Part shown: positions 11,586-42,932 of the stretch, in pieces
Layout of the letters: every line of letters begins with the position of its first letter
Position numbering within the stretch: position 1 is the first letter of the stretch
IMG/VR virus record: IMGVR_UViG_3300009093_000035
Coordinates: 124,001 to 188,000 of that record
Strand: one strand, 5' to 3'
Length of the DNA: 64,000 nucleotides
Program-made: the position numbers and the translations under genes
Notes under the pieces: model-generated
Seen by the model: the letters and a program-made list of their open reading frames with translations, nothing else
The model's database searches: none
Told to the model about the DNA's origin: nothing

Positions 11586-13046
11586 ATGGTGCCCCCTCGA
11601 AAACTCTTTCAAGCTATCGGCGCCACCCAGCAGAGCGCGCGAGACGCGATCGCCGCCATCGCGGCCTCCGACGTCGGTGGAAGCGCTCCTGGTCCCTGGG
11701 CCTCGGTCCTTTACGTCGACCAGGTTCGAGGAAACAACACCACCGCTCAGCGAGGGAACGAGAATTTCCCGTTCGCGACGATTCAGGCAGCACTCAACGC
11801 GATGCAAACCGACGACACGGTCATGCTCGCACCCCAGCTCTTCACGATCACCGCAACGCTCACGGTGCCGGCGACGGTCGTGCGCGGCAGTATCTGCGGA
11901 GTCGGGCCATCCGGCGATTACGGCAACCCAGCAACGAGCGGTCCACTGACTAAGCTCGTATCTACTACGACCGATCTTTGGAACTTCGGCGCGAATCTCG
12001 GCTTGACACAATGGGTCATGTCAAACTTCTCGATGCGCACAACCCTCGCGGGCTCTTCGTGCATCCTCGCCGACGGATCGTCATACGCAAAGGCGACGTT
12101 CTTCGGTGCCGGCGGCGGCCTGACCTTGCGGAGCATGGTGCTCCGCAGCGCCAACGGCGCAAACGTGATGAACGTGAAGTATGCCGTCGGCGTCCAGCTC
12201 TTCGACGTTTGGAACACGGGCGGGAACTACTTGTTCACTACCGGAGCGGCGGTGACACTCGACCAGTTCCGCGGGACAGGAACGACAGTCACCACGACCA
12301 ACGACTCGTCTGACCCGCTAGCGATAAGCAACCAATACGCACTACAGATCCAGAACGGTACTCACATCGGCACGAGCGCATTCGGCACTGGTGTCGTCAT
12401 CGGCGGACAGACGAGCCTCAATCAGGACGAGACCTCGATCATCGGTGTTCTGAGTGGCTCTTCACTCTCCGTAGTCGGCTCGGGCAAGCCCGCTTGTGTC
12501 TGCGACGGTTGGATCGGCTCGATCGACTTCGCGAGCGCGGGCAAGGAGATCCCCGACACCGCGCTAGTGCTCTCGTTCATCTTCCAGGGCGCGCGCCTTT
12601 ACCAGAACGGTTTCACCACCATTACACCTGGCGTGTTCAAGGCGAAGGTTGGTGGTTCGGCCGTGAACTTCCAGTCAATGAATATTGACTCTACGACCAC
12701 AGTGCCTGGCGCTACAATCACGGCGGACGCAGCGATTCACATCACAGGACGCGGCGCTCGCTGGCCGAACGTCACGCTCGCGACGCCCGGTACAACGGGC
12801 GACATCATCCCGCCGATCCTCGCTGGCGTGATCGACCTCTCGGCTGGCGGTGCCGTGGCGAAGACGTGGGTTCAGCTCGGTATCCCCGGGCTGATCCGTG
12901 TCGGCGCCGCTCCAAACGAAGCGTTCCTCACGCCGAACATCCGCGGGGCTGACGCCGCAATCACCGTGAAGTCAACCACTGGACTCACTTTCGATTCGGC
13001 AGCGGTCGCGAACAACGCCTGCAACTGGCAGGCCATCTGGAACTGA
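11586..13046 (+). CDS. Beta-helix (pectate-lyase-fold) spike/depolymerase-like protein
   Basis: YVDQVRGN..PFATIQAALNA..DTVMLAP beta-helix cap; G/T/S-rich body; AAGGA SD before the ATG at 11586. Confidence 0.75.
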   Translation: MVPPRKLFQAIGATQQSARDAIAAIAASDVGGSAPGPWASVLYVDQVRGNNTTAQRGNENFPFATIQAALNAMQTDDTVMLAPQLFTITATLTVPATVVRGSICGVGPSGDYGNPATSGPLTKLVSTTTDLWNFGANLGLTQWVMSNFSMRTTLAGSSCILADGSSYAKATFFGAGGGLTLRSMVLRSANGANVMNVKYAVGVQLFDVWNTGGNYLFTTGAAVTLDQFRGTGTTVTTTNDSSDPLAISNQYALQIQNGTHIGTSAFGTGVVIGGQTSLNQDETSIIGVLSGSSLSVVGSGKPACVCDGWIGSIDFASAGKEIPDTALVLSFIFQGARLYQNGFTTITPGVFKAKVGGSAVNFQSMNIDSTTTVPGATITADAAIHITGRGARWPNVTLATPGTTGDIIPPILAGVIDLSAGGAVAKTWVQLGIPGLIRVGAAPNEAFLTPNIRGADAAITVKSTTGLTFDSAAVANNACNWQAIWN

Positions 13047-13056
13047 GGAACTCTTC

Positions 13057-13449
13057 CTAGGGCCAGGTCGAGATCGCTCCAGCGTTGATCGCCAAGTGGA
13101 GCACGTTGTCCGCGAGGATCAATAACCACCCCGCTAGCCAGTCGGGCTTATCCTTCTTGTACCCGTGCCAGGCGGCCTCTCCCCACGGATACCGGTACGT
13201 GGCGGGAGCGATCTGGTTCTTCGCCCACACGAGGTACCGAGCGAGTCGGTAGCGGTCGATCAAGGCGTGGGTGATGCAGATCACTGCGAGCGCGATCGGA
13301 GACCGTGTCACGAGTAGGAAGGGGAGCGAGTAGACGACCGCATGCCAGAAGGCGACGAGAAGGCTCTTCGTCTTCTCCGAGGCCATGTGGTCCGTCTGGA
13401 GGAGATAGTCGCCCGTTCCGTGACAGATCAGAACCCAGAGTCCTAGCAT
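13057..13449 (-). CDS. DUF3307-family membrane protein
   Basis: HGTGDYLLQT..MA..K, HAVVY, THALIDR, DNVLH pattern. Confidence 0.85.
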   Translation of the reverse strand: MLGLWVLICHGTGDYLLQTDHMASEKTKSLLVAFWHAVVYSLPFLLVTRSPIALAVICITHALIDRYRLARYLVWAKNQIAPATYRYPWGEAAWHGYKKDKPDWLAGWLLILADNVLHLAINAGAISTWP

Positions 13450-19444: not shown

Positions 19445-20323
19445 TCATCGCGTGATCTGAAGACGAGCCAGGCCGCGGGGGTTGTAGGCCCCAATGCCAA
19501 GGTTCTCGAAGACAGAGAAGCCGATCGTGCGCGCCTTCGGGTCGTCCGCCGAGAGGACCGTCAGCTCGGTACGGACCGGGATCCGACCGAACATCTCGGG
19601 CTCGCAGCACACGTACACCGTGCCCACCGGAACGAGGCGGCTCGTGATGACCTGGGCGCCCCAGAGGGTCGCCTGGAGGCCGGTCTTGAGCAGCGTCGCC
19701 TGGGACTCGATGTCCAGGATGTCCCGACCGAACTTGCGGATGTCCTCGTAGTCCCGCGCGTTCATGTACACGCGCGCGACCCGGAGGTCGTGGCGCTCGA
19801 TGAGAGCGAAGGCGTCCGCGAGAACCGCACCGGTGATCGGAGCGACGACGGGGATGTCCGGGTTCAGCCCGCCCGGGAGCGAGTCGAAGCCGTTCACCGC
19901 GATCGCGTCCAGAACCGCGAAGACGCGCTCGTCCTCGGCAGCCTGGATCATCGCACGCGCCAGATCCTGGGCGCGCTCGATCAGATCGAAGCGACGCTCC
20001 TTGATCTGGGTGAGCGGGATCTCCGGGTTCGAGGCGATCTCGAACAGCGGGAAGATCACGCGGCGCGGCTTGGTGATGGCGAGGATGTTCTCGCCTTCCT
20101 CGCCGACCACGTACGCGGTGACGTCCGGGTCCTTGTCGTAGATCGGCAGCGCGCCGTCCGGCAGCTGCTCCACGAGGAAGGTCTTTCGACCGACGCTCAT
20201 GTAGTCGCGGCGCGTACGAAGCGGCTGCGTCATGGACGCAGCGAGCTTGTTGCGACCCGAAGCGGTCTTCAGGTAGTCGCTGATGATCTTCTGCTTGACA
20301 GCGTTGTTGACGTTGATGGTCAT
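19445..20323 (-). CDS. Major capsid protein (HK97 fold, Bxz1-like)
   Basis: LAASMTQPLR..DY..RK; PLFEIASNPEI...IQAAEDERVF resembles the mycobacteriophage Bxz1-type MCP; follows protease and scaffold; strongly biased codons. Confidence 0.9.
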   Translation of the reverse strand: MTINVNNAVKQKIISDYLKTASGRNKLAASMTQPLRTRRDYMSVGRKTFLVEQLPDGALPIYDKDPDVTAYVVGEEGENILAITKPRRVIFPLFEIASNPEIPLTQIKERRFDLIERAQDLARAMIQAAEDERVFAVLDAIAVNGFDSLPGGLNPDIPVVAPITGAVLADAFALIERHDLRVARVYMNARDYEDIRKFGRDILDIESQATLLKTGLQATLWGAQVITSRLVPVGTVYVCCEPEMFGRIPVRTELTVLSADDPKARTIGFSVFENLGIGAYNPRGLARLQITR

Positions 20324-21026: not shown

Positions 21027-21398
21027 AGGGTTTCCTAGCCTTTGCTCCCTGTCGGGAGAGTGGTGAGTGGAGGATCAAGGACCCGTTCAGACCAGCCTGT
21101 CCGGGGCGACGGAGCCTCTGGGCGCCGTCAATATAAAGCGCCGTGTATTCGGTCAAAAACGAGATCTTCTGAAGAATTCTGACGCCATTGGGGCGTACAC
21201 CTGGAGAAGACCGATGAGAGAGGCGCTCGAAGGCAGTGACGAGAGGCGACAGGCGAGGATGCTTCTGCTCATCCACGCCGAGCAGGCACGAGCCCTTCAC
21301 CTCTCTTTCGATGGGTGGCTGGAACGCGAACGTCAGGACCTGATAGACGCGGTGTCGACTCAGGACCTGATTTCGATCGGATCAATCATCTGGGGCTA

Positions 21399-21432
21399 GA
21401 AACGAAAAGGGACCGGGCCGAAGCCCAGTCCC
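21399..21432 (-). terminator. Intrinsic terminator after the scaffold gene
   Basis: GGGACTGGGC-TTCG-GCCCGGTCCC followed by TTTTCGTTT. Confidence 0.85.
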
Positions 21433-21458: not shown

Positions 21459-22985
21459 TCAGCCGCCGAAGACCTTCGAGACGTCGGGGGACGTCTCCCA
21501 GAGCTTCGAGAGGTCCGCGATCTCGGCCGAAGCCGTACGCGAGTTCGAGGGAACCGAGCCGAGGGTGCGGGGACCGGTCGACGCGACGCGGGGCTGGGGC
21601 TTGACGGCGGCCTTCTTGGCCTCCTTCTTCGCCTCGTCCTCGTCGGACTTCTTCTCCTCGGCCTCGTCGTCCGCCTTCTTCTTCCCGGCGTAGCGACCAC
21701 CGTAGACGGCGGCCATCTCGTTCTCGCTGAGGCCACCCATCTCCGACGGGTCCATGAGAGCCATGGGGTCCTCGCCGAAGACGTCGTCCATCATCGGGTC
21801 CTCGTCCATGCCCGAGAGCATGTCGTTGACGTTGGCCTTCTTCTCCTCGCCCTCGGCCTCGTCCTCGGACTTCTTCTCTTCCTCGGCGTCGTCGTCGGCC
21901 TTCTTGGCCTCCTTCTTCGCCTCGTCGTCGTCCGAAGCCGTCTCCTCGTCGTCGTCGGCCTTCTTGGCCTCCTTCTTCTCGGAGTCGTCCTTCTTCTCGA
22001 AGGGGGGCGCCTTCTTCCCGCCGAAGGGCTCGTCCTTCTTCGCGGACTTGGCGGCCGAAGCCTTCTTCGACTCCTCCTCCATCATCTCCGCGAGCAGGGC
22101 TTCGTCCTCGTCCTCGTCTTCCGAGGCCTTCTTGTTCTTCCCGAGGTCCGAGCCCTCGTAGTTGTAGTGGGCGGGATCGTTCTGGTTGCCCGACGGAGCA
22201 GCGCGGCGACCCGAGGCCTTCTTCGCCTCCTTCTCGGTCTCCTCGTCCTCGTCCGCCTTCTTGGCTTCCTTCTCGGTCTCCTCTTCCTCTTCCTCGGCGG
22301 CCTTCTTCGCCTTCTTCGCGAAGTGGGCGGCGAGACGGGCGTACTTCGCAGCCTTCTTCGCCGCGACCTCCGCATCGTCCTCGTCTCCGTCCTCGTCGTC
22401 GGCCTTCTTGGCCTCCTTCTTGGACTCCTCTTCCTCTTCCTCGGCCTTCTTCGAAGCCGGGACCACGACGTCCTCGTCATCGACGATCATGTCGTCGGCG
22501 AGGAGATCGTCGGCCGAGCGCTCGGGCGTGAGCGTGTAGTTCGCGTCCTTCCCGCCGAGACGGGCGAGAGCGGCGGCGATCTGACGATCACCGAGCGACA
22601 TGAGGTCGAGGGCCTGGTCCTCGATCGCGTCCACGGACGCGTTCTTCGGAAGCATCGACGTCGCGATGCGGATGCACTTCGCGGCCTTCTGCGTCATCGC
22701 AGCGCGGAGCTGGCGGCTGGCCGCCTTCGACCCGCTCGGGAAGTAGTGGGCCGGATCCGTCGCCGGGTGACCCTGGGGCTCCTGCATGCCGGGGTCGGCC
22801 GGAGCGGGCGTGTTCGGGTAGGGACCCGGGTGCGGATCCTCGGCCCACGACGACGGATCGCCGTTCATGTACTTGTCCGCGTCCGGGTCGGGGCCGGGCC
22901 ACGCGGGGTGGTTGGTGCCTTCGGCGTAGCCCGGGGTAGCCGGGGGTGCAGAAGCCTTGCGATCGGTCGTTCGGCGGCGCGTCAT
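21459..22985 (-). CDS. Probable capsid scaffolding protein
   Basis: Between protease and capsid genes; acidic/Lys low-complexity EAKKADDE repeats. Confidence 0.7.
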   Translation of the reverse strand: MTRRRTTDRKASAPPATPGYAEGTNHPAWPGPDPDADKYMNGDPSSWAEDPHPGPYPNTPAPADPGMQEPQGHPATDPAHYFPSGSKAASRQLRAAMTQKAAKCIRIATSMLPKNASVDAIEDQALDLMSLGDRQIAAALARLGGKDANYTLTPERSADDLLADDMIVDDEDVVVPASKKAEEEEEESKKEAKKADDEDGDEDDAEVAAKKAAKYARLAAHFAKKAKKAAEEEEEETEKEAKKADEDEETEKEAKKASGRRAAPSGNQNDPAHYNYEGSDLGKNKKASEDEDEDEALLAEMMEEESKKASAAKSAKKDEPFGGKKAPPFEKKDDSEKKEAKKADDDEETASDDDEAKKEAKKADDDAEEEKKSEDEAEGEEKKANVNDMLSGMDEDPMMDDVFGEDPMALMDPSEMGGLSENEMAAVYGGRYAGKKKADDEAEEKKSDEDEAKKEAKKAAVKPQPRVASTGPRTLGSVPSNSRTASAEIADLSKLWETSPDVSKVFGG

Positions 22986-24427
22986 GTCAGTCTCTCCTTG
23001 TGGGCACGAGTTTCGGCGGTTCGCCGAGCGGTAGGAAGATCCGCCAACAGGGTTGCCAACCGAACCATCGTGTTGACTTCCTCGTTGGAGGGAGCGTGGC
23101 CGAGAGCTTTCTTCACGGCCTTCAAGAAATGAGCCGGTTCCCGATACAAATCTCGGGCTCCAACCTTTAGCGCAGCCCTATAGATTGAAACGGGAAGCAA
23201 AACGCCGATTTCCCGATTCAGGGTTGCAACACGGTTGATCAGTTCGACGTCCGAGGTAGACGTCGCCACCAGGGTACGGAGCGACGCCACGTAGGCGGCC
23301 CTCTTCCCGGCGAGGCGAGCCTGCTTCACGACGGTGTCATTCGGAGCGTCCGAAGGCGGCAGGACCTGGTCCTCGACCTTCTTCTTCGTCAACTCTTCCT
23401 TCAGCTGGTCCTTCACGCCGTCGAGGACGACCGACTTCAGCTCGTTCTCGATCCCACCCAGCGGGGACTCCGAGGGGCCCTTCTTCGGCGGAGCCATCTC
23501 CTCTTCTGGAGCGGCTTCCTCTTCCTCAGGAGCGTCCTCGAACCCGCCGGTGCGGGCGGCCTTCTTCCGGGCGTTCGGATCCGCGACCGGAGCCGGGGAG
23601 GCGAAGACCTTCTCGGCCGCCTTCTTCTTCCCGCTGTCGATCTCCACGACGTTTCGAGCGACGGCGCCCGTGAACGCGGGGGTCTCTACCCAGGAAGCCT
23701 CGACGAAGGTAACGCCGCCGGTCGGGTCGAGAGACTCGTCCCCACACAGCTCAGCGACCCGGTGCTTCCCACCGTTCTCGTCGTAGAAGACGTTGCCCTT
23801 CTCGTAGCGAATGTGATCGCAGAACTCGGTCTCGTCCGCCGCCCAGTGACCGCACTTTGTGCAGGTCGAGCCGTCGATCGAGCACCCCATCGAGAGAGTC
23901 GAAAGCTCCCCTGAGGCGATCTTCGCGCAGAGGTCTTCGTGCTTCCGGTCGTTCGCGACGAGGATGTCCACGTAGATCGAGTCGCCGACGTCGCGGGCTA
24001 CCGCATCGATGATGCGACCCTTCGAGAGCTTCTCGATCTGGACGTGCTCCACGAAGGAGTGTCCCCCGACGAAGGTCTTGTACGACTTCAGAAGGACCGG
24101 ACGGGCCCAGGAGTCGAGGTTGTTGTTGATGTACTTGTCGCAGGCGCTCTTGATCCGGAAGTTCGTCGTCTTCCGGACGATCTTCTTCCCGTCCTCCGTA
24201 GAGGAACCCAGCTTCGCCTTCGGGACCTTCTCGGTATCCACCGAGGCCACGATCGTAGCATGGGTGAGGAGGAACTTCTTCGGGTCGAAGTCCGACTGAA
24301 GGATCTTCGAGGCCTGGTCGATGATATCTCGCCCGGCCTTGAGCGAACCCGACGCCACCCTCACCCGGTCCCAGTCTCGGACGTGGGGAGTAACGTTGAT
24401 GCTACGGGCGTAGCGAAGGAAAGCCAT
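22982..24427 (-). CDS. Prohead (capsid maturation) protease
   Basis: NNNLDSW..YKTF..FVEH, SMGC (catalytic Ser), CTKCG..CDH zinc insert, FVEASWVETPAF. Confidence 0.85.
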   Translation of the reverse strand: MAFLRYARSINVTPHVRDWDRVRVASGSLKAGRDIIDQASKILQSDFDPKKFLLTHATIVASVDTEKVPKAKLGSSTEDGKKIVRKTTNFRIKSACDKYINNNLDSWARPVLLKSYKTFVGGHSFVEHVQIEKLSKGRIIDAVARDVGDSIYVDILVANDRKHEDLCAKIASGELSTLSMGCSIDGSTCTKCGHWAADETEFCDHIRYEKGNVFYDENGGKHRVAELCGDESLDPTGGVTFVEASWVETPAFTGAVARNVVEIDSGKKKAAEKVFASPAPVADPNARKKAARTGGFEDAPEEEEAAPEEEMAPPKKGPSESPLGGIENELKSVVLDGVKDQLKEELTKKKVEDQVLPPSDAPNDTVVKQARLAGKRAAYVASLRTLVATSTSDVELINRVATLNREIGVLLPVSIYRAALKVGARDLYREPAHFLKAVKKALGHAPSNEEVNTMVRLATLLADLPTARRTAETRAHKERLT

Positions 24428-29491: not shown

Positions 29492-31273
29492 TTAGAACCG
29501 ACTCTCTTCCTTATCCGTGGGCTTCGTGTACTTCAGGTTGAGCCTCTTCGCGAGGATCTCGTTGAAGTCGCTGTTCTCGACGAGCTGACGCCCCGCTTCC
29601 CCGTACATCGTTCCGATCAGGTCGTTGAACTTCGAGTCGTTCACCGTGAACATGTCTCGGGTCAACTTCTCCTTCGTCGAGTGGGGGTCGATGTTGAGAA
29701 GTTCGAGGATGATGTCGATGTCGAGGGAGCCCTTCTGGTAGAGGTTGAAGAGCGCGTCGAAGGTGTCGGCGTTGTCTCGAAGCGCGAGACGCGTGAACGA
29801 GAGACCGGGAACGATGATGTTCTCGTTCCCGTCGTCGTCCTCCTCGACGAAGCCCATGCGCTTACACATCGGCTTCAGGAGATTGTTCTCGATCATGTCC
29901 TGAAGGATCTCTCGGAGGAGCATGTACCGAGTGTTGATCACTTCGAGGTTGATTCGGTCGCCGGAGTAGCTCGACTCACCGGAGAGGAGTGACTCGGTCA
30001 CGCCGAGACCCGCGTACATCTGACGATCCGTCATCTCGTACTCGCCCGAGAGTTCGAGGAGGCGCTGCTGGCTCCCCATCTCTTCCCAGTGGAGTTCGAA
30101 GTTCGTGATGATCGAGTAGTCCGGGTCCATGAGGGCCAGGTCGACCTGCTCGCGGATCGCGTCCACGTCGGCGATGCTGGCGTCTTCGGCCCAGATCACC
30201 CGGATCGGGGTCATGTGACGAGAGGCGATAGACGTCTGAGCCTGGCGGAGCTTGTCGCGGTAGACGAGGATCCGAAGGCACCGCTCCAGGAGCGAGTGGC
30301 CGCGGGGCTCGTACTGAGACTTCTTCCGGGCCATGTAGTAGACGAAGGACCCGGCGTCCGGATTCGTGTTCAGGGGGATGTTCTGGCCGCTGCGGATCGA
30401 CTCCACGACCGACGGGGGCATCGACTCCACAACCCGTTGCGCGTGCTCGTCTCCGGAGTCGGCCCTCTGAATCACGTCCTTCGTCTTCGAGTCCGCGATC
30501 AGCTCGATCAGCTTCTCGTCCGTGAAGGGGAAGCCCTCCATGTGGACCTGTTCCGGAGGAAGGACGCGAAGGGCGGTCCAGCCCTTGTAGTTCTTCCGGA
30601 GCCAGCGACTCGTCCTCTCGGCCCAGTCGGATCGACGCCGCTTCTCCTCGACTGGATGGCCGGAAACGTCGATCTCCCGGATCATCTCGAACTCGATGTC
30701 TTCGGGCATGTCCGGGGAGTTGTCCTCCGCGAACACGTAGACCTCGCCCAGAAGGTTGTACTCGTGGACGATCTCGATCAGACGATGGAGGAGCCCGATC
30801 TCCTTCGCCCACTTCGTACAGAAGTTCAGCGAGGCCTCGGCGATGTCCCTGTTCTTCGCCTCGGGCTTCCGGAGACGGATCTTCGAGAGAGGAAGCTCCG
30901 TGTGGAGATCGACAGCCTGGCCTACGAACGGATCCGCCCCATAGAAGAAGCGGTAGTAGTTCCGCTTCTCGTCCGCCGATTGGGGTAGTTCGAGGAAGTC
31001 GGTCGAAAGCTCGGGGCTGTAGAAGTTACCCCCGCTCGCCGACGCGACACCGCCCGTAGCCGGGAAAGCAACCTTGGAGCGGAGGGCGCTCGTGATCACT
31101 CGCTTCGGAGGACCCGTTTCTACGTTCGCCTTCTTCGCGATCCGTCGGACCTCGACCGCCTCCTGAGACTCCCGAGTCGTGCGGCGATTGTCGGCCGCCA
31201 CGACCTTCCCCTTTTTGGGGATCCGTCGGACTTCCAATCCGTCCTGATTCTGGGTCTGCTTACGAGTAGGCAT
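29492..31273 (-). CDS. Portal protein
   Basis: 593 aa downstream of TerL; RFFY..DPFVGQAVDLHTELPLS, RGHSLLERC, GLGV...LSGESSYS. Confidence 0.85.
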   Translation of the reverse strand: MPTRKQTQNQDGLEVRRIPKKGKVVAADNRRTTRESQEAVEVRRIAKKANVETGPPKRVITSALRSKVAFPATGGVASASGGNFYSPELSTDFLELPQSADEKRNYYRFFYGADPFVGQAVDLHTELPLSKIRLRKPEAKNRDIAEASLNFCTKWAKEIGLLHRLIEIVHEYNLLGEVYVFAEDNSPDMPEDIEFEMIREIDVSGHPVEEKRRRSDWAERTSRWLRKNYKGWTALRVLPPEQVHMEGFPFTDEKLIELIADSKTKDVIQRADSGDEHAQRVVESMPPSVVESIRSGQNIPLNTNPDAGSFVYYMARKKSQYEPRGHSLLERCLRILVYRDKLRQAQTSIASRHMTPIRVIWAEDASIADVDAIREQVDLALMDPDYSIITNFELHWEEMGSQQRLLELSGEYEMTDRQMYAGLGVTESLLSGESSYSGDRINLEVINTRYMLLREILQDMIENNLLKPMCKRMGFVEEDDDGNENIIVPGLSFTRLALRDNADTFDALFNLYQKGSLDIDIILELLNIDPHSTKEKLTRDMFTVNDSKFNDLIGTMYGEAGRQLVENSDFNEILAKRLNLKYTKPTDKEESRF

Positions 31274-31694: not shown

Positions 31695-31949
31695 TCAATC
31701 CCAAGAGGGAGTCTTCGTCAGGTACCCGTTCTTGTAGGCTATCTTGATGATCTTCTTCAGGAGCCGGACCTGGTCGATGTCTCCGTCGAAGACCCCCTCC
31801 CAGCTTCCTTCAGCGCGATCGAAGACCCGAACAATCAGGTCGTACTCCTCCGGAAGATGGACGACCTTGTACATCGCCTCCAGGATCTTCTTGATGATCC
31901 TGTAGTCGGCTCTCACCGGTACCAACGGGTCGTTCTTCGCAGTCTTCAC
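31695..31949 (-). CDS. Hypothetical protein
   Basis: GTGA overlap with the TerL stop. Confidence 0.6.
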   Translation of the reverse strand: MKTAKNDPLVPVRADYRIIKKILEAMYKVVHLPEEYDLIVRVFDRAEGSWEGVFDGDIDQVRLLKKIIKIAYKNGYLTKTPSWD

Positions 31950-33793
31950 CGAATCGGCCTTCCCCTACCCAAAGACACTCCGCGAGGAACCATCCGAGAT
32001 TCGACGCTTCCGCTTCTCAGGAGTCTCCGACGAGAGAGCCCTACGTTAGAGCCGAACCCTGACGAACTACCGAGAGGGAGCCCGGTTCGGGTGAGATGGG
32101 GTTGTTTCAGGAGGCGATTCGAGGCGAGCCACACCATTCGGACGAGAGCGTCCGACATGTCGTCGTGCTTCCCTTCGATGTTTGGGGCTTCGACTGTAGT
32201 GATGTACTTCGAGTGATACCGGGCCTGGAGTTCGAGAAGCTCCTTGATGTAGGCGCAGTGCTCTTCGTGGGCTTCCTTCGGCCAGTCGTAGAGACCTAGC
32301 CGGTTGTCCCACAACATCGACTTGAAGTTCTGGAAGATCTGGGACGTCAACGGCTTCGTCATGACGACCGACTTCAGCTGGGTGAGACCCCGCTTCTTCA
32401 GCGCCTGTTCGAAGGGGATACCAGTCCACTGGTCGAAGATCCCGTCGATCACATAGAACTTGTTACACCACTCCTTCACCCAATCGGCTACGTCGTCGAA
32501 GTCGAGGCGATCCACATCCTCGTACTTCCCTTCACCAGCCTTGATCTGATCGACCATATCGACCAAGATCTTCCCCTTCTCATCGATGTGGCCGAGCGAG
32601 ATCGCCGTCGCGTCTCCCTTGAGCGCCAAGTCGATTCCCATGAAGTAGGGACGACGGGGCATCCCTCGAACCTGGGGTCGGAGAACAGGGTTGATACACT
32701 TCGTGAGGTCGGTCTTGTCTTCGATCCAACCGCGAGTACGGTCCGTGAACTCGCCGCCGTACTCCGTGAAGAAGACCGTGGAGTCCTTCAAGTAGTGCTT
32801 CTCGAACTCCGTCGCCGGAATCGTCGGGTTCACTTCCCAGGTCGGAGCCTGGATACAGAGCATGGTGTCGGAGACCGAGCCTCCGCCCATACCCATCTGG
32901 AAGAGCTTGTAGAACAAGCCCTGACGACCCAAAGGGGACGAGATCAGGATCACGCGGGCTTCGACCGACCCGATAGAGACTCGCGAGTTCGTCGGATCCT
33001 TCGGCGAGAAAGCCGAGGTCGAGGGGACGACGGCGTTGTAGACGGCGTCGGCCGAGGATTGGCCAGCGTCGGTGAAGTGGGCCACCTCGTCGAGGATGAC
33101 AACGATGTTACCGGAACCACGAAGACCCTTCGCGATACAGGACCGGAAGGTGACTCGGATCGAGGCCTTCGCGTTCTTGTTCTCTGAGTAGGGGCCGTAC
33201 TTCTCAACGTCCTTCGGCGACTGGAATCGCGCGTAAGACATCGTGTTGTTCGCCATGTACGGCATGAAGAAGTCGCAGTTACGGAAGTGGCCGGAGACCT
33301 CCTGGTAGAGGATGCCCGCCTGGTCCTTGTCCGTAGCGACCGAGATCAGCTGGATAGCGTTCGAGGGAGGGAGACCGTAGTAGGCCTGGGGGTCACCCTT
33401 CGAAATCAGCTTGTAGGTCTCGTAGGCAGCGATACAGGCCGAGATCGTGGTCTTACCGGAGCGGCGGCCGATCGAAAGGATCATCTCCCGCCGGTCGTGG
33501 CCAGCGGTCACCTCTTTGATCGAGGAGCGACCCTCTTTGAAGAGGTACTCCAGGTACTCCTTCTCCGTGAACTCCAGGAACTTCTGACGGCGCCAGTCGG
33601 AGATCTTGAACTTGACCTTGTCGTCTAGCTCGATCCCGTAATGGGCCTTCAGGATGACCTTTTGGACCGGGAAGAGCTTCATGTTGAGCCCCCAGGGCTC
33701 TTCGATGAACTCGATCGGTCCTACGACCTGTTTCTTCTTGGTAATCGAGGAAACGGCACGAGCGCCCGCGAGGGCTATGTTTCCCAGACTCAA
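31946..33793 (-). CDS. terL: Terminase large subunit
   Basis: Q motif PVQ, Walker A GRRSGKT, Walker B VVILDE, ISSP coupling motif, nuclease GIDLA and HDDMSDA. Confidence 0.95.
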   Translation of the reverse strand: MSLGNIALAGARAVSSITKKKQVVGPIEFIEEPWGLNMKLFPVQKVILKAHYGIELDDKVKFKISDWRRQKFLEFTEKEYLEYLFKEGRSSIKEVTAGHDRREMILSIGRRSGKTTISACIAAYETYKLISKGDPQAYYGLPPSNAIQLISVATDKDQAGILYQEVSGHFRNCDFFMPYMANNTMSYARFQSPKDVEKYGPYSENKNAKASIRVTFRSCIAKGLRGSGNIVVILDEVAHFTDAGQSSADAVYNAVVPSTSAFSPKDPTNSRVSIGSVEARVILISSPLGRQGLFYKLFQMGMGGGSVSDTMLCIQAPTWEVNPTIPATEFEKHYLKDSTVFFTEYGGEFTDRTRGWIEDKTDLTKCINPVLRPQVRGMPRRPYFMGIDLALKGDATAISLGHIDEKGKILVDMVDQIKAGEGKYEDVDRLDFDDVADWVKEWCNKFYVIDGIFDQWTGIPFEQALKKRGLTQLKSVVMTKPLTSQIFQNFKSMLWDNRLGLYDWPKEAHEEHCAYIKELLELQARYHSKYITTVEAPNIEGKHDDMSDALVRMVWLASNRLLKQPHLTRTGLPLGSSSGFGSNVGLSRRRLLRSGSVESRMVPRGVSLGRGRPIR

Positions 33794-39995: not shown

Positions 39996-40322
39996 CTACC
40001 AGATGAAGTTCGTCTCGAACCCGCGAGACTCCATCCACGCCGCGAGCTTCCGGAGCCCGTCGCAGTCGGAGGCCCAAACCTCGATCGTGTTCGTCCCGAC
40101 GATCTCTCGAACCCCCAGGTTCTGGATCGAAGCCAGGGAGCCGATCCGGCTCTTCCCGTCCCTCCAGGACCGCAAGGATCCGACGAGAAGCCTCATGTCC
40201 AGCTCGGACTTCCCCGAGCCCGCCATGACGGTGAATCGGAATTCCTCGGTGGAATTCGCTGAAATCCAACGGTCCGCCACCTGACGGGCCATCGCGATCT
40301 TTACTTCAGGCCGTAGTTCCAA
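39996..40322 (-). CDS. Hypothetical protein, first gene of the putative late operon
   Basis: TTG at 40322 with GAGGA SD; CGTT-N7-CTAT at 40352-40366. Confidence 0.6.
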   Translation of the reverse strand: MELRPEVKIAMARQVADRWISANSTEEFRFTVMAGSGKSELDMRLLVGSLRSWRDGKSRIGSLASIQNLGVREIVGTNTIEVWASDCDGLRKLAAWMESRGFETNFIW

Positions 40323-40372
40323 CTCGGGTTCCTCTTCCCAGGAGGGAATGGATAGGTTGGAAAACGCCCAAC

Positions 40373-40984
40373 TCAGTCGATCACGCAGTCGATCCGAGAA
40401 GTCGGAGTCCGACGGCGACGAACTTCCCTCATGATGTTGAGGTTGTCCGCGATCATCTTGAAGATGTCCGAGTAGAAAGCCATCGACTCGTCGGCCGACA
40501 TCTTCTTGATCGAACGAATGAACCGGTGTCGGACGAGCCCCTGCGAAACCTTCAGTCGCTTCGCGCTCTCGCTCTGACACGTCGTCTCGTACATGAACAT
40601 CATGATGTCGATGTCCATGGGGTCTGTCATGAACCGGGAGAGATCCGCTCTCATCTGAACCACATCCACCTTCGGGAGGATCAGAAGGAACTTGATTCGA
40701 TCGATCGCTCGATAGAGACGATAGCAGACTGTGGGTTGACTCACCCCGAAGATCGACGCGATGTCGGTCTGCTTGACATGCTTGAAGAAGTACATGTCCA
40801 TGAAGTCGGCTTCGACGGGAGGGAGGAGGTCGAGCATCCCCTTCACCTTGTCCATCATCTTGACGTCGTCCTCGTCAGGCTCGGTGAACACCGAACCGAA
40901 GTACGAGAGGGAGTCCTCCGTAGAGAACACCGCGTCCGGATCAAACGAGGCGGCTGAGCCCCGAAAATTTTGACTCGTCTTCAT
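40373..40984 (-). CDS. Protein with two tandem sigma70 region-4-like HTH domains
   Basis: LPPVE..KQTDIASIFGVSQPTVCYRLYRA and CQSESAKRLKVSQGLVRHRFIRS. Confidence 0.75.
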   Translation of the reverse strand: MKTSQNFRGSAASFDPDAVFSTEDSLSYFGSVFTEPDEDDVKMMDKVKGMLDLLPPVEADFMDMYFFKHVKQTDIASIFGVSQPTVCYRLYRAIDRIKFLLILPKVDVVQMRADLSRFMTDPMDIDIMMFMYETTCQSESAKRLKVSQGLVRHRFIRSIKKMSADESMAFYSDIFKMIADNLNIMREVRRRRTPTSRIDCVID

Positions 40985-41014
40985 TCGGGGACCTCAAGAG
41001 AGACCCTGTTGGTC

Positions 41015-41623
41015 TCAATCCTCAGGGATATACTCGGGACCTACGGCGACGTCAAGAGGGTCGACTTCGCTGAGAGTATCCTCTCCTGAGTTCTCCGAGA
41101 CGTCTACCAGAAAGACCTTGGGCAACCAAGTCACGACGTCGATAGACCTGAGTGTGATACGAACGGCAGCACGATCTCCGTTCAAATCTACCACTTCGCC
41201 CTCCAGGTGGGTGTAGTTCCCACCTGTGATTTTCACCTTCGCCTCGATCTCGATGTCTGAAGAGACCTGACTCCTCAGCTGGTCCATCATGCCTCGAATC
41301 TTCGAGTCGGGGACCGTCTGGAGCGTTCGAAGATTGTAGGGTCCCGAGGAGGACATGACTCGGCTCACCAGCGCTCCGCGCTCTAGAGCAAAGTACCGGG
41401 TCTCCGTTAGACCGGAGCCTACGAACGCGTAACCCTCGATCAGGCGGACCGAGACTTTTCTCCCGCCCTTCGAGTAACTGGTGTAGGGAACGAAGATCGG
41501 ATGGGACTCGGGGATAGACAGACCGCTACGCAACGCTTCTACGAGCGTTCCGTCGATCGCCTTCTGTTCACCCGCCTTGGTCAGCTCCAGCGCTACCCAA
41601 GTTATCTTGTCCCGAACGTCCAT
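41015..41623 (-). CDS. NusG/RfaH-family transcription elongation factor
   Basis: NGN: W..L, IFVP..RLIEGYAFV. KOW: KVKITGGNYTHLEGEVV. Confidence 0.85.
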   Translation of the reverse strand: MDVRDKITWVALELTKAGEQKAIDGTLVEALRSGLSIPESHPIFVPYTSYSKGGRKVSVRLIEGYAFVGSGLTETRYFALERGALVSRVMSSSGPYNLRTLQTVPDSKIRGMMDQLRSQVSSDIEIEAKVKITGGNYTHLEGEVVDLNGDRAAVRITLRSIDVVTWLPKVFLVDVSENSGEDTLSEVDPLDVAVGPEYIPED

Positions 41624-42932
41624 TCTTCTTTTCGGTCTCCAACTCGTCGAACCTCCCCCTCACAAGCCTGAAGAACTCCAGGGGCTTGATAGAGGAAGAA
41701 GAAGCCACTGGGGTGGGAACAACCTCTCCAGGACTCCTGACCGCTCGGGGGTGGACGTACACATCGTCAACCAACTTCGGTTCCCCGCCGTCAGTCTTTA
41801 CCGTACCTGACTCTGCTTGGATAGGCGAGGGTGTCGGAGCGGGGGCTGAAGAATAGAACCGGGGAGGAGCCACCGCGTCCTCATGTAGCTGGGCGATATC
41901 GCACAACAACATAGAGGCACTGGGACGCAACGGACGCGACGAGAACCGACTCGCGTAGGCGAGTAGACGGCTCCCCTCCTTCCTCCCGATCTCCTGGACC
42001 TTCCCCCGGTCCATGTATGAAGGAATCAAGGCCAGGCCCAACCCGGCTCGATACGCCAGCATCGACGCGTCCGAGAGTCTCTCGTAGAGAGTGGTAGGGT
42101 TCGTGCTACCCAAAAGCTCCGAGACCTTCTGAAGAGCGGAGGGAAGATCCGAGTAGATCGAAGAGAGAATGTCCATCACCATGAGATGGACATCCAGGTG
42201 AAGGTACTGGGCCGCGTTCTCCCGAGTGATCGCGCCGAGCTTCGAGACACCCTCCACCGCCTTCAGGGCGTCTCGGATGTGACACTCAGTCAGCTCACCA
42301 ATCAGCTCCAAGGCCTCCTTCTCGTAGGAGAGTCCTTCCTCCTTACACACCGCCTCCAACCGCAAGGCGATCTGAATCGGCTTCACCGGCTTGATCAAGA
42401 ACGCCGGGGCGCAGCGAGACAGGATCGTCGCCTTCATCCGCTCCGGCTCGGTGGTACAGAAGATACAGACCAAGCTCTTGTTCTGAGAGCCCGGAATTCC
42501 TTCCTCCATCGGCTTCAGGAGTGCGTCGAGCGCGTCCTGGCTGAGTCGGTGGGATTCGTCGAAGAGGTGTATCCGCTGCTTCCCTGAGAAGGAAGCGTAG
42601 GTGATCTCCTCGGTGATTTTCCGAATCGAATCCTTACCGCTGTTGGTGGCCGCGTCTACCTCAACGAAGTTCTCGGAGGTACCACCGATCAGAATCGACT
42701 TGCACGAGATACAGGCGTCGCAGGCCTGGCCATCGACCGGGGCCTCGCACAAAAGAGACCGGGCCAGGATCCGACCCACCGTCGTCTTCCCGGATCCCCA
42801 AGGACCCGCGAAGAGATAGCTCTGGTGGAACCCGGCTCCGGTGCTCACGTACTGCCTCAAGATTGAGACGGTACTCTCTTGTCCGAGAAGATCTTCGTAC
42901 CTCTGGGGACGGTATTTCGTGTCGAGGGCCAA
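41568..42932 (-). CDS. dnaX: DNA polymerase III gamma/tau clamp-loader subunit
   Basis: KYRPQ, GPWGSGKTT, CDACISC, EVDAA, DESH, TILSRC. Confidence 0.93.
   Translation of the reverse strand: MALDTKYRPQRYEDLLGQESTVSILRQYVSTGAGFHQSYLFAGPWGSGKTTVGRILARSLLCEAPVDGQACDACISCKSILIGGTSENFVEVDAATNSGKDSIRKITEEITYASFSGKQRIHLFDESHRLSQDALDALLKPMEEGIPGSQNKSLVCIFCTTEPERMKATILSRCAPAFLIKPVKPIQIALRLEAVCKEEGLSYEKEALELIGELTECHIRDALKAVEGVSKLGAITRENAAQYLHLDVHLMVMDILSSIYSDLPSALQKVSELLGSTNPTTLYERLSDASMLAYRAGLGLALIPSYMDRGKVQEIGRKEGSRLLAYASRFSSRPLRPSASMLLCDIAQLHEDAVAPPRFYSSAPAPTPSPIQAESGTVKTDGGEPKLVDDVYVHPRAVRSPGEVVPTPVASSSSIKPLEFFRLVRGRFDELETEKKNGRSGQDNLGSAGADQGG

What the first reader, a model, noticed from the sequence alone, without database searches (positions are those of the whole stretch)
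40373..41623. Double sigma-region-4 protein with no region 2, next to a phage NusG paralogue, at the head of the late operon
Seen: two tandem sigma4-like HTHs and no recognisable sigma2 melting domain; the adjacent gene has NGN and KOW domains; a late motif follows immediately at 40352-40366. Known: T4 splits late sigma function between gp55 and gp33, and NusG paralogues (RfaH, LoaP) antiterminate long operons. Inference: a split-sigma or sigma-appropriation activator plus a dedicated antiterminator for the long head operon.
Basis: partly seen in the sequence, partly recalled or inferred. Interest (0 to 1): 0.62.

Follow-up and report, generated by a model that had tools for sequence, protein, structure and literature searches.

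The report
Tandem sigma-4 protein with NusG partner
A clade of uncultured soil phages with very large genomes carries, between its replication and virion genes, a conserved gene pair (a NusG-type elongation factor and a protein made of two sigma region-4 DNA-binding domains with no region 2) that most likely redirects the host RNA polymerase to the virion genes.

Summary
Window 40373-40984(-) encodes a 203-aa protein made of two homologous sigma-region-4 helix-turn-helix domains. It has no region 2, and neither do 48 scanned relatives. Window 41015-41623(-) encodes a divergent NusG-fold protein with NGN and KOW domains.

The pair sits after the clamp-loader gene and before the virion genes (terminase, portal, protease, capsid). 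This order is kept in ten related huge-phage contigs. The family has over 1000 metagenomic members and appears in no cultured phage record.

No region 2, multisubunit RNA polymerase or AsiA was found in this 248-kb record or in a 485-kb relative. One divergent candidate sigma lies elsewhere in the genome.

It is part of a conserved two-part element, GGCGTT-N6-CCTATC. That element occurs three times in the record and at the same position in relatives.

Docking to the E. coli beta flap got only weak support.

Most likely this is a late-gene activator that stands in for host sigma region 4, plus an elongation or antitermination factor. Split sigma, a Q-like factor and a plain regulator remain open. 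No function was tested.

The parts
41015..41623 (-). NusG-family protein, 202 aa. The NGN domain covers about residues 8-105 (nt 41309-41602). A linker helix covers residues 106-122. The KOW barrel covers residues 129-174 (nt 41102-41239). The C-terminal tail is acidic and disordered. The start overlaps the clamp-loader ORF by 56 nt.
40373..40984 (-). Tandem sigma-region-4 protein, 203 aa, with no region 2. It has a conserved acidic N-terminal segment (FGS.FT.PDEDD). It ends in a conserved helix (NLNI.REVRR) followed by a disordered basic tail with the pattern R-x3-[VIL][VIL]-D.
40673..40879 (-). Domain 1 (residues 36-104): a canonical sigma-4 (4.1+4.2) helix-turn-helix.
   Evidence: Pfam r4 at E 5.5e-8. 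Z 8-9.4 to sigma-4 of SigL, SigB, SigR, SigF and sigmaE.
40427..40672 (-). Domain 2 (residues 105-186): a second helix-turn-helix, homologous to domain 1, plus the conserved C-terminal helix.
   Evidence: Weak r4 hit at E 0.057. hhalign of D1 against D2 gives 95.6%, E 1.1e-8. Z about 6 to wHTH and LysR HTH folds.
40351..40368 (-). Conserved non-coding two-part element GGCGTT-N6-CCTATC, starting 5 nt after the stop codon of the tandem sigma-4 gene. It is a candidate binding site or promoter element at the head of the virion module.
39996..40292 (-). First downstream gene, a conserved 98-aa protein of unknown function. It is present (97-108 aa) in eight of the ten relatives; L036 and L037 carry other small ORFs there. 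It is followed by conserved 142-aa and about 395-aa (pectin-lyase-like, tail-fibre-like) proteins.
   Evidence: no family or Atlas lead
41568..42932 (-). Clamp-loader (DNA pol III gamma/tau-like) gene, always immediately upstream and overlapping the NusG-like start. The pair is probably co-transcribed with the replication genes.
21399..21432 (-). Strong intrinsic terminator: a G+C-rich hairpin followed by a T-run. It lies after the 508-aa gene and before the 226-aa gene and the major capsid gene. It is the only convincing minus-strand terminator between 40.5 and 20.5 kb.

Best explanation
This is a conserved two-gene transcription module of a clade of uncultured soil/rhizosphere phages with genomes of about 0.4-0.5 Mb. 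These phages appear to rely on the host RNA polymerase.

The pair is the last two genes of the replication gene array: the NusG-like gene overlaps the clamp-loader gene, and the sigma-4 gene follows 30 nt after it.

Proposed role of the 203-aa protein:
- It is a late-gene activator built from two sigma-region-4 domains.
- It binds duplex DNA through two non-identical helix-turn-helix units. The best candidate site is GGCGTT-N6-CCTATC, whose half-sites are 12 bp apart centre to centre. The first copy lies directly after its own stop codon, at the head of the virion genes.
- It docks on the polymerase where sigma region 4 normally sits (the beta flap).
- Promoter melting is left to the host sigma's region 2 or to a still unrecognised partner. 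This resembles sigma appropriation.

Proposed role of the NusG paralogue: it binds the elongating polymerase and keeps it processive through the roughly 20-kb virion gene array, including the terminator at about 21.4 kb.

Shown: the folds, the internal duplication, the absence of region 2, the synteny, the position, and the conservation of the motif.

Inferred: polymerase binding, binding to the motif, timing of expression, and antitermination.
For: - Folds and duplication.
- The family has 1055 members at E<=0.001, on contigs up to 485 kb. Among 50,697 phage records it matches only LR745208.1.
- The order clamp loader, NusG-like, sigma-4xN is kept in LR745208.1 and nine metagenomic contigs; the small gene after it varies in L036 and L037.
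- Replication genes lie upstream. Terminase, portal, protease and major capsid protein lie downstream.
- No Sigma70_r2, no beta or beta-prime Pfam domains, no T7-type polymerase and no AsiA were found in the 248-kb record or in the 485-kb relative. Full-length phage sigma profiles matched only their region-4 part.
- No sigma-70-consensus promoter was found in 20.5-40.5 kb, against 2.0 expected.
- The two-part element has 3 perfect copies against about 0.03-0.05 expected. All are intergenic and on the gene strand. At the same position in 11 genomes, (C)CTATCC is kept in about 9 and the upstream CG(T/G)T half in about 7-8.
- Docking to E. coli beta 831-1057 scored 0.44, with the best of 3 controls at 0.01. 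That mark was reached by 58 of 80 solved complexes and 2 of 110 mismatched pairs. A score of 0.60 or under was seen in only 7 of those 80 and in both mismatches that passed. The runs agree in at least 32% of contacts, and partner pLDDT is at least 70. The tool's verdict is 'weak support'.
Against: - No expression or binding data exist, and no RNA sequencing run holds this DNA.
- The flap docking is weak and may come from the model's memory of solved sigma-4/flap complexes.
- The full two-part element is not found in LR745208.1, although the recognition helices are almost unchanged there. Only CCTATC remains at the same position.
- The element was defined after seeing the data, so its P-value is optimistic.
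- The genes downstream of the other two copies have no annotation, so 'late' is unproven.
- If CCTATCC were a -10-like element, the GGCGTT half would lie near -24. That is not the -35 position where region 4 normally binds.
- The record is only 56% complete, and the relative's completeness is not stated. Pfam and PHROG profiles can miss very divergent region-2 or polymerase proteins.
Confidence: 0.42

Rival explanations
1. True split sigma. The tandem sigma-4 protein supplies only the upstream (-35-type) recognition and flap contact. A separate, highly divergent region-2 protein (like T4 gp55, RsoA or Tn916 Sig8) supplies -10 recognition and melting.
For: Two-subunit sigmas are established: T4 gp55/gp33, SPO1 gp33/gp34, SigO-RsoA and Tn916 Sig7-Sig8 (abstracts). 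Such partners are small and can escape family models. Only 56% of this genome is held.
Against: No region-2 signal was found in the 485-kb relative with Pfam Sigma70_r2 or with two full-length phage sigma profiles. The conserved neighbours (98 aa and 142 aa) have no family or Atlas match and were not folded. The one candidate divergent sigma elsewhere seems to carry its own region 4.
Confidence: 0.12
2. Q-like antiterminator. The sigma-4-like protein binds a DNA site near the late promoter and loads onto the polymerase at the beta flap. It then travels with the polymerase and makes it terminator-resistant, together with the NusG paralogue.
For: The gene sits at the head of the late genes, as Q does. 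Four-HTH family variants reach or approach the Phage_antitermQ cut-off (27.5 and 24.4 bits, cut-off 26). The solved Q21 chain appears among structural matches (6jnx_P, Z 6.6). From memory, not tested here: lambda Q has a sigma-4-like HTH and contacts the flap tip. A site adjacent to a -10-like element would fit a Q-binding element.
Against: The window's own protein has no PF06530 match, and only 1 of 48 members does. The similarity covers only the generic HTH. No promoter-proximal pause signal could be defined.
Confidence: 0.12
3. Ordinary DNA-binding regulator (repressor, autoregulator or activator) with two HTH units that never touches the sigma-4 site on the polymerase. The NusG paralogue acts independently.
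For: Sigma-4-type HTHs occur in many plain regulators (LuxR/GerE, YlxM/UPF0122, DUF134). These appear among the matches. Domain 2 resembles generic winged-helix or LysR HTHs as much as sigma-4. A site spanning about -26 to -9 would fit an operator. The flap docking is only weak.
Against: Domain 1 matches true sigma factors best in every library. The gene is adjacent to a polymerase-binding NusG paralogue in all ten relatives, which argues for a shared polymerase-directed role.
Confidence: 0.2
4. Sigma-4 decoy for host shut-off. The protein occupies the beta flap, or titrates partners of host sigma region 4, and so blocks -35-dependent host transcription without itself directing promoters.
For: T4 gp33 binds the flap and represses basal transcription (reviews found). 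The acidic N-terminal segment and conserved tail could be protein-binding motifs.
Against: Both recognition helices are almost invariant and keep the T-V-x-x-R-[LF]-x-R pattern of DNA-reading ECF sigma-4 helices. A conserved DNA element sits next to the gene.
Confidence: 0.04

Closest known systems
T4 late transcription factors gp33 (flap-binding co-activator), gp55 (region-2-like) and the gp45 sliding clamp
   Same: Phage factors divide sigma's jobs on the host polymerase. One protein occupies the beta flap in place of sigma region 4. The genes sit close to the replication machinery; here the pair always follows the clamp-loader gene.
   Different: gp33 does not bind DNA and is not recognisably sigma-4 in sequence. 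Here there are two true sigma-4 HTHs. No gp55-like or region-2 partner was found. Any link to the clamp is untested.
Two-subunit sigma factors: B. subtilis SigO-RsoA and Tn916 Sig7-Sig8
   Same: One subunit consists essentially of sigma region 4 and lacks region 2.
   Different: Those have a single region 4 and an identified region-2 partner encoded next to it. Here region 4 is duplicated in tandem (quadruplicated in some relatives) and the adjacent partner is a NusG paralogue.
T4 MotA/AsiA sigma appropriation
   Same: The proposed logic is the same: a phage protein replaces -35 recognition by host sigma region 4 while host region 2 still reads the -10.
   Different: There is no homology to MotA, and no AsiA was found. 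The candidate DNA element lies closer to the putative -10 than a MotA box does.
Lambdoid Q antiterminators
   Same: An HTH protein at the head of the late operon, with a DNA site near the promoter and a flap contact. Some family variants give weak PF06530 matches.
   Different: The window's protein has no PF06530 match. The similarity covers only the generic HTH. The tandem sigma-4 architecture is not that of Q.
RinA/ArpU-type late activators of Gram-positive phages
   Same: Small sigma-4-related activators encoded just upstream of the packaging and virion genes (abstract of PMC3152322).
   Different: Those have a single HTH, occur in small temperate phages and have no NusG partner. No family match was found here apart from a faint DUF1492 match in one variant.
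Specialised NusG paralogues: RfaH, LoaP, UpxY
   Same: The NGN+KOW fold, and an expected role in keeping the polymerase processive over one long operon. The best NCBIfam match is UpxY (E 6.6e-6).
   Different: Scores lie far below every family cut-off (26 against 100, 20 against 136, 15 against 125 bits). The protein is phage-encoded, has an extra linker helix and an acidic tail, and has no identified recruitment site.

Membership tests
Sigma-70 family sigma factor | A region 2 domain (binds the beta-prime clamp helices, reads the -10 element, melts DNA) | tested here: not met
   No Sigma70_r2 in the protein or in any of 48 relatives. The AF2 model has only two HTH domains. TIGR02937 scores 40.7 bits, below its cut-off of 42.9, and matches only profile positions 108-162.
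Sigma-70 family sigma factor | A region 4 domain (reads the -35 element, binds the flap) | tested here: met
   The fold is met. Pfam Sigma70_r4 scores 32.6 bits, above the 24.1 cut-off. Z 8-9.4 to solved sigma-4 domains. Flap binding itself has only weak support: 0.44 against 0.01.
Split (two-subunit) sigma factor | A separate region-2 partner encoded by the same element | tested here: inconclusive
   None was found by Pfam or by two PHROG sigma profiles in the 248-kb record or the 485-kb relative. Small divergent partners could be missed. The record is 56% complete.
NusG/Spt5 family | An NGN domain followed by a KOW barrel | tested here: met
   Met by fold: Foldseek E 8.5e-10 to NusG over 179 columns, and matches to RfaH and Spt5. 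Sequence models are sub-threshold: NusG 15.2 against 22.2 bits, KOW 12.2 against 22.3 bits.
RfaH / LoaP / UpxY specialised paralogues | Score above the family's curated cut-off | tested here: not met
   UpxY 26.2 against 100 bits; LoaP 14.6 against 125 bits; housekeeping NusG equivalog 19.8 against 135.7 bits.
RfaH / LoaP / UpxY specialised paralogues | A dedicated recruitment element in the leader, and antitermination activity | not testable with these tools
   A conserved leader element exists. Whether it recruits the NusG paralogue cannot be decided from sequence.
Phage antitermination protein Q (PF06530) | Family model match above the cut-off | tested here: not met
   No match for the window's protein. 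1 of 48 relatives matches at E<=0.01. One four-HTH variant scores 27.5 bits against a cut-off of 26.
T4 AsiA/MotA sigma appropriation | An AsiA-type anti-sigma that remodels host region 4 | tested here: not met
   PF09010 is absent from both genomes. MotA was not searched.

The most novel reading that the evidence does not exclude
The two proteins together form a sigma surrogate that needs no region 2.

- The NGN domain of the NusG paralogue binds the beta-prime clamp helices. Established NusG/RfaH biology shows that this is the site sigma region 2 uses. The NGN domain would also read the non-template strand, as RfaH reads ops.
- The tandem sigma-4 protein holds the beta flap and reads the duplex two-part element.
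- Host core polymerase would then start at virion-gene promoters without any sigma-2 domain, and the NGN partner would simply stay on as the elongation factor.

The evidence does not exclude this. The pair is adjacent in all ten relatives. No region 2 was found in a 485-kb genome.
Probability: 0.06. Interest if true: 0.9.

Novelty: new variant of a known kind. Interest (0 to 1): 0.58.

Why it matters
How uncultured huge phages run their gene-expression programme without their own RNA polymerase is largely unknown. This module is widespread, with more than 1000 homologues. It stays syntenic across relatives that share only about 50-60% protein identity.

It joins two kinds of polymerase-directed factors that are known separately: sigma-4-like late activators and NusG paralogues. 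The architecture (a tandem or quadruple region 4 with no region 2) was not described in the papers searched here.

If it works as proposed, it extends the range of ways to re-target a bacterial polymerase. It would also give a simple marker for the switch from replication genes to virion genes in these genomes. The candidate 18-bp site makes the idea directly testable in vitro with recombinant proteins, even though the phage is uncultured.

Tried and rejected
- Sigma-70-type promoters around the pair: 0 in 20.5-40.5 kb and 3 weak ones in 40.5-60.5 kb, no more than in shuffled sequence. Terminator-like hits overall also equal the shuffled expectation; only two minus-strand hairpins are convincing.
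- Two abundant genome motifs are not conserved in LR745208.1: GTAACGAACGAG-N10-11-TACAC, and GGCGTAArG close to start codons. The recognition helices of the tandem sigma-4 protein are nearly invariant, so these motifs are poor candidates for its target.
- The GATAGG/CCTATC similarity to the -10 region of LR745208.1's abundant promoter was considered. It was set aside because orientation and context differ.
- PHROG annotation of the genes downstream of the other two copies of the element gave nothing informative.
- The Atlas look-up of the 98-aa neighbour gave no hit.
- The BFVD fold search found no viral protein with the same two-domain architecture, only single sigma-4 matches.
- A profile of the 'sigX' family against solved structures matched only the C-terminal HTH and not region 2. 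Its status as a sigma rests on language-model features only.
- A clamp-binding role for the conserved C-terminal tail was considered from synteny and the T4 and Mu precedents. It was not tested, because the single complex job went to the beta flap.

Full report
**What is there**

The stated interval holds two co-oriented minus-strand ORFs: 41015-41623 (202 aa) and 40373-40984 (203 aa).

The 203-aa protein:
- It matches Pfam Sigma70_r4 at residues 51-98 (E 5.5e-8, 32.6 bits, cut-off 24.1) and Sigma70_r4_2 at residues 47-95.
- A six-frame scan finds a second, weak r4 match at window 40499-40597 (E 0.057).
- An alignment of 48 relatives was cut into residues 38-104 and 105-186. Comparing the two profiles gives 95.6% probability and E 1.1e-8 over the helices of the HTH. 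The protein is therefore an internal duplication of region 4.
- The AF2 model (pLDDT 80.5, pTM 0.67) is all-helical.
- Residues 36-104 superpose on solved sigma-4 domains (SigL, SigB, SigR, SigF, sigmaE) at Z 8-9.4. Residues 105-186 resemble generic winged-helix or LysR HTHs at Z about 6. Foldseek finds only sigma-4 domains.
- NCBIfam sigma models match only their region-4 end and stay below their cut-offs.
- All 48 relatives hit Sigma70_r4 and none hits Sigma70_r2.
- Some relatives are longer. An N-terminal extension has no family match. In two cases the whole two-domain unit is duplicated, giving four HTHs.

The 202-aa protein:
- It is sub-threshold for Pfam NusG and KOW and matches phrog_6386 'transcription antiterminator'.
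- Its AF2 model (pLDDT 86) matches full-length NusG at Foldseek E 8.5e-10 and also matches RfaH and Spt5.
- By NCBIfam it is nearest to UpxY, then NusG, then LoaP, far below every cut-off.

**Where it is**

- The window is bases 124001-188000 of a 248,579-bp IMG/VR virus record that CheckV rates 56% complete.
- The identical protein also lies on a 472,929-bp contig.
- The only match among 50,697 phage records is LR745208.1, an uncultured 485-kb phage. It is colinear with the window over the virion and replication modules, and its major capsid protein is 93% identical.
- Holders of the DNA are rhizosphere and soil metagenomes. No RNA run holds it.
- In the window nearly all genes are on the minus strand.
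- From 58.6 to 41.6 kb lie a helicase, a UvsX-like recombinase, SbcCD, an exonuclease, the sliding clamp, a primase and the clamp loader. From 40.3 to about 17 kb lie tail-fibre-like proteins, the large terminase (31946-33793), the portal (29492-31273), the prohead protease (22982-24427) and the major capsid protein (19445-20323).
- The pair therefore sits exactly at the boundary between the replication and virion modules. The NusG-like start overlaps the clamp-loader ORF, which suggests expression with the replication genes.

**Conservation**

- The tandem sigma-4 family has 1055 members at E<=0.001, on contigs up to 485 kb.
- The order clamp loader, NusG-like, sigma-4xN is kept in LR745208.1 and in nine metagenomic contigs. 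Eight of the ten relatives also keep a 97-108-aa gene and then a 142-aa gene after it; L036 and L037 carry other small ORFs there. The relatives' sigma-4 proteins are 48-88% identical to the query.
- In the two most distant contigs the upstream gene was confirmed as the NusG paralogue by profile comparison (E 1e-38 and 3e-56).
- LR745208.1 also carries a paralogue of the tandem sigma-4 protein at 153829-154695, with an N-terminal extension.

**Search for a region-2 partner or a phage polymerase**

- Pfam Sigma70_r2 gives nothing credible in the 248-kb record and nothing in LR745208.1.
- Two full-length phage sigma profiles match only through their region-4 part in both genomes.
- The beta and beta-prime core domains, T7-type polymerase and AsiA are absent. 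The T7-type control was uninformative.
- One lead appeared outside the window, a 265-aa ORF at G000:204484-205281. It has a weak C-terminal r4 match. Its language-model feature similarity to sigma-70-family clusters is 0.96. It has an orthologue in LR745208.1 at 31% identity.
- A profile of that ORF's family matches solved structures only in the C-terminal HTH. It may be a very divergent complete sigma. It does not look like a region-2-only partner.

**DNA signals**

- Aligning the leader after the sigma-4 gene across close relatives shows a conserved element.
- In the 248-kb record GGCGTT-N6-CCTATC occurs perfectly three times, at genome positions 60444, 117473 and 164368 (window 40368). About 0.03-0.05 copies are expected. 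All three are intergenic, on the gene strand, and 40-99 nt upstream of a start codon.
- At the same position in 11 genomes, (C)CTATCC is kept in about nine and the CG(T/G)T half, six bases upstream, in about seven or eight.
- LR745208.1 keeps only CCTATC.
- The two unlike half-sites lie 12 bp apart centre to centre. That is the geometry expected for two unlike HTH units on one face of the helix. This is inference only.
- The motif was defined after seeing the data, and the genes after the other two copies have no annotation.
- No sigma-70-type promoter was found in 20.5-40.5 kb.
- The only convincing minus-strand terminators are at about 21.40-21.43 kb (between the 508-aa gene and the capsid genes) and at 58.71-58.74 kb. 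A hairpin occupies the position of the first one in LR745208.1.

**Polymerase docking**

The tandem sigma-4 protein, with its alignment, was co-folded with E. coli beta residues 831-1057.
- The score was 0.44, and the best of three controls was 0.01.
- The pass mark was reached by 58 of 80 solved complexes and 2 of 110 mismatched pairs.
- A score of 0.60 or under was seen in only 7 of those 80 and in both mismatches that passed.
- The runs agree in at least 32% of contacts, and partner pLDDT is at least 70.
- The tool's verdict is 'weak support'. Because sigma-4/flap complexes are solved, the pass may come from memory.
- The host is unknown, so E. coli served as a stand-in.

**Interpretation**

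The best-supported reading is a polymerase-directed module that switches on the virion genes.
- The first part is a sigma-4-type, DNA-binding, probably flap-binding activator that lacks region 2. It must therefore work with the host sigma's region 2 or with an unseen partner.
- The second part is a NusG-family elongation factor for the long virion array.

Three alternatives remain open: a split sigma with an undetected partner, a Q-like loader, and a plain two-HTH regulator. A decoy role is less likely, because both recognition helices are nearly invariant and keep the pattern of DNA-reading ECF helices.

**Literature**

- Split sigmas are established: T4 gp55/gp33, SPO1 gp33/gp34, SigO-RsoA and Tn916 Sig7-Sig8.
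- A survey of 224 jumbo phages describes minimal single-HTH sigmas and gp33 orthologues. It contains no occurrence of 'NusG' and does not describe a tandem region 4.
- The huge-phage survey mentions sigma-70 and AsiA only.
- Searches for phage-encoded NusG returned reviews of cellular paralogues.

I therefore rate this a new variant of known kinds. It is not a new principle unless the composite 'NGN in place of region 2' model proves true.

Noticed in passing
Whole record and LR745208.1; in the window e.g. 62494, 54688, 19077, 16384, 15003, 11000 (minus strand): A GNGTAA motif (GGCGTAArG in this genome) lies 13-16 nt before start codons. This genome has 31 such sites and LR745208.1 has 91; in LR745208.1 the spacing is 13-14 nt in 59 of them. 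These genes often lack a Shine-Dalgarno sequence. In about a quarter to almost half of the cases (25 of 91; 14 of 31 here) the TAA is the stop codon of the upstream gene. It could be an unusual translation signal or a -10-like element of leaderless mRNAs.
   Followed up: partly
L048:566 and 599 (G000 204236, 204269); also G000 108337, 108815 and nine sites in 222876-246509 (outside the window): A two-part promoter-like motif, GTAACGAACGAG-N10-11-yTACACy, occurs 11-13 times in this genome. Most copies are on the plus strand, upstream of small genes. It is not conserved in LR745208.1.
   Followed up: partly
LR745208.1, e.g. L011:1608-1650, 12950-12990, 13202-13245: LR745208.1 carries about 45 copies of a roughly 45-bp promoter-like motif, CGATTTCnCTAAAAAGT-N11-12-CGTGCCGATAGGGTAtTGAGG. 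Each lies just upstream of a small gene that has a normal GAGG ribosome site. The sequence differs from this genome's motif but the layout is the same (a TAnnnT-type -10).
   Followed up: partly
L048:814-1611 (+) = G000 204484-205281; orthologue at LR745208.1 430264-430767: A 265-aa protein is a candidate very divergent sigma factor. Atlas feature score to sigma-70 clusters is 0.96. It has a weak C-terminal region-4 match. Its conserved N-terminal block resembles regions 2.1-2.4 by eye only. Pfam, PHROGs and NCBIfam do not recognise it.
   Followed up: partly
L043:1186-2052 (+) = LR745208.1 153829-154695: A paralogue of the tandem sigma-4 protein in the relative, with an N-terminal extension (faint integrase-repeat match). 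It lies in a region rich in the abundant promoter motif and has no NusG-like neighbour.
   Followed up: partly
L037:6001-7014 (P0086); also P0072: Family variants in which the whole two-HTH unit is duplicated, giving four sigma-4-like domains. The shared C-terminal helix is retained.
   Followed up: partly
window 21027-21080 (minus strand): A conserved leader hairpin (CTCCC...GGGAG), followed by CAAAG and an AGGA ribosome site, precedes the 226-aa gene that comes before the major capsid gene. It is also present in LR745208.1.
   Followed up: no
window 40376-40426 (tail of the sigma-4 protein) and 41018-41100 (tail of the NusG-like protein): Both proteins end in disordered tails with conserved short motifs. 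The sigma-4 protein ends in R-x3-[VIL][VIL]-D(S) after a basic linker. The NusG-like protein has an acidic D.LD..GPE..PED tail. These are possible docking peptides. Because the pair always follows the clamp loader, the phage sliding clamp is one untested candidate.
   Followed up: no
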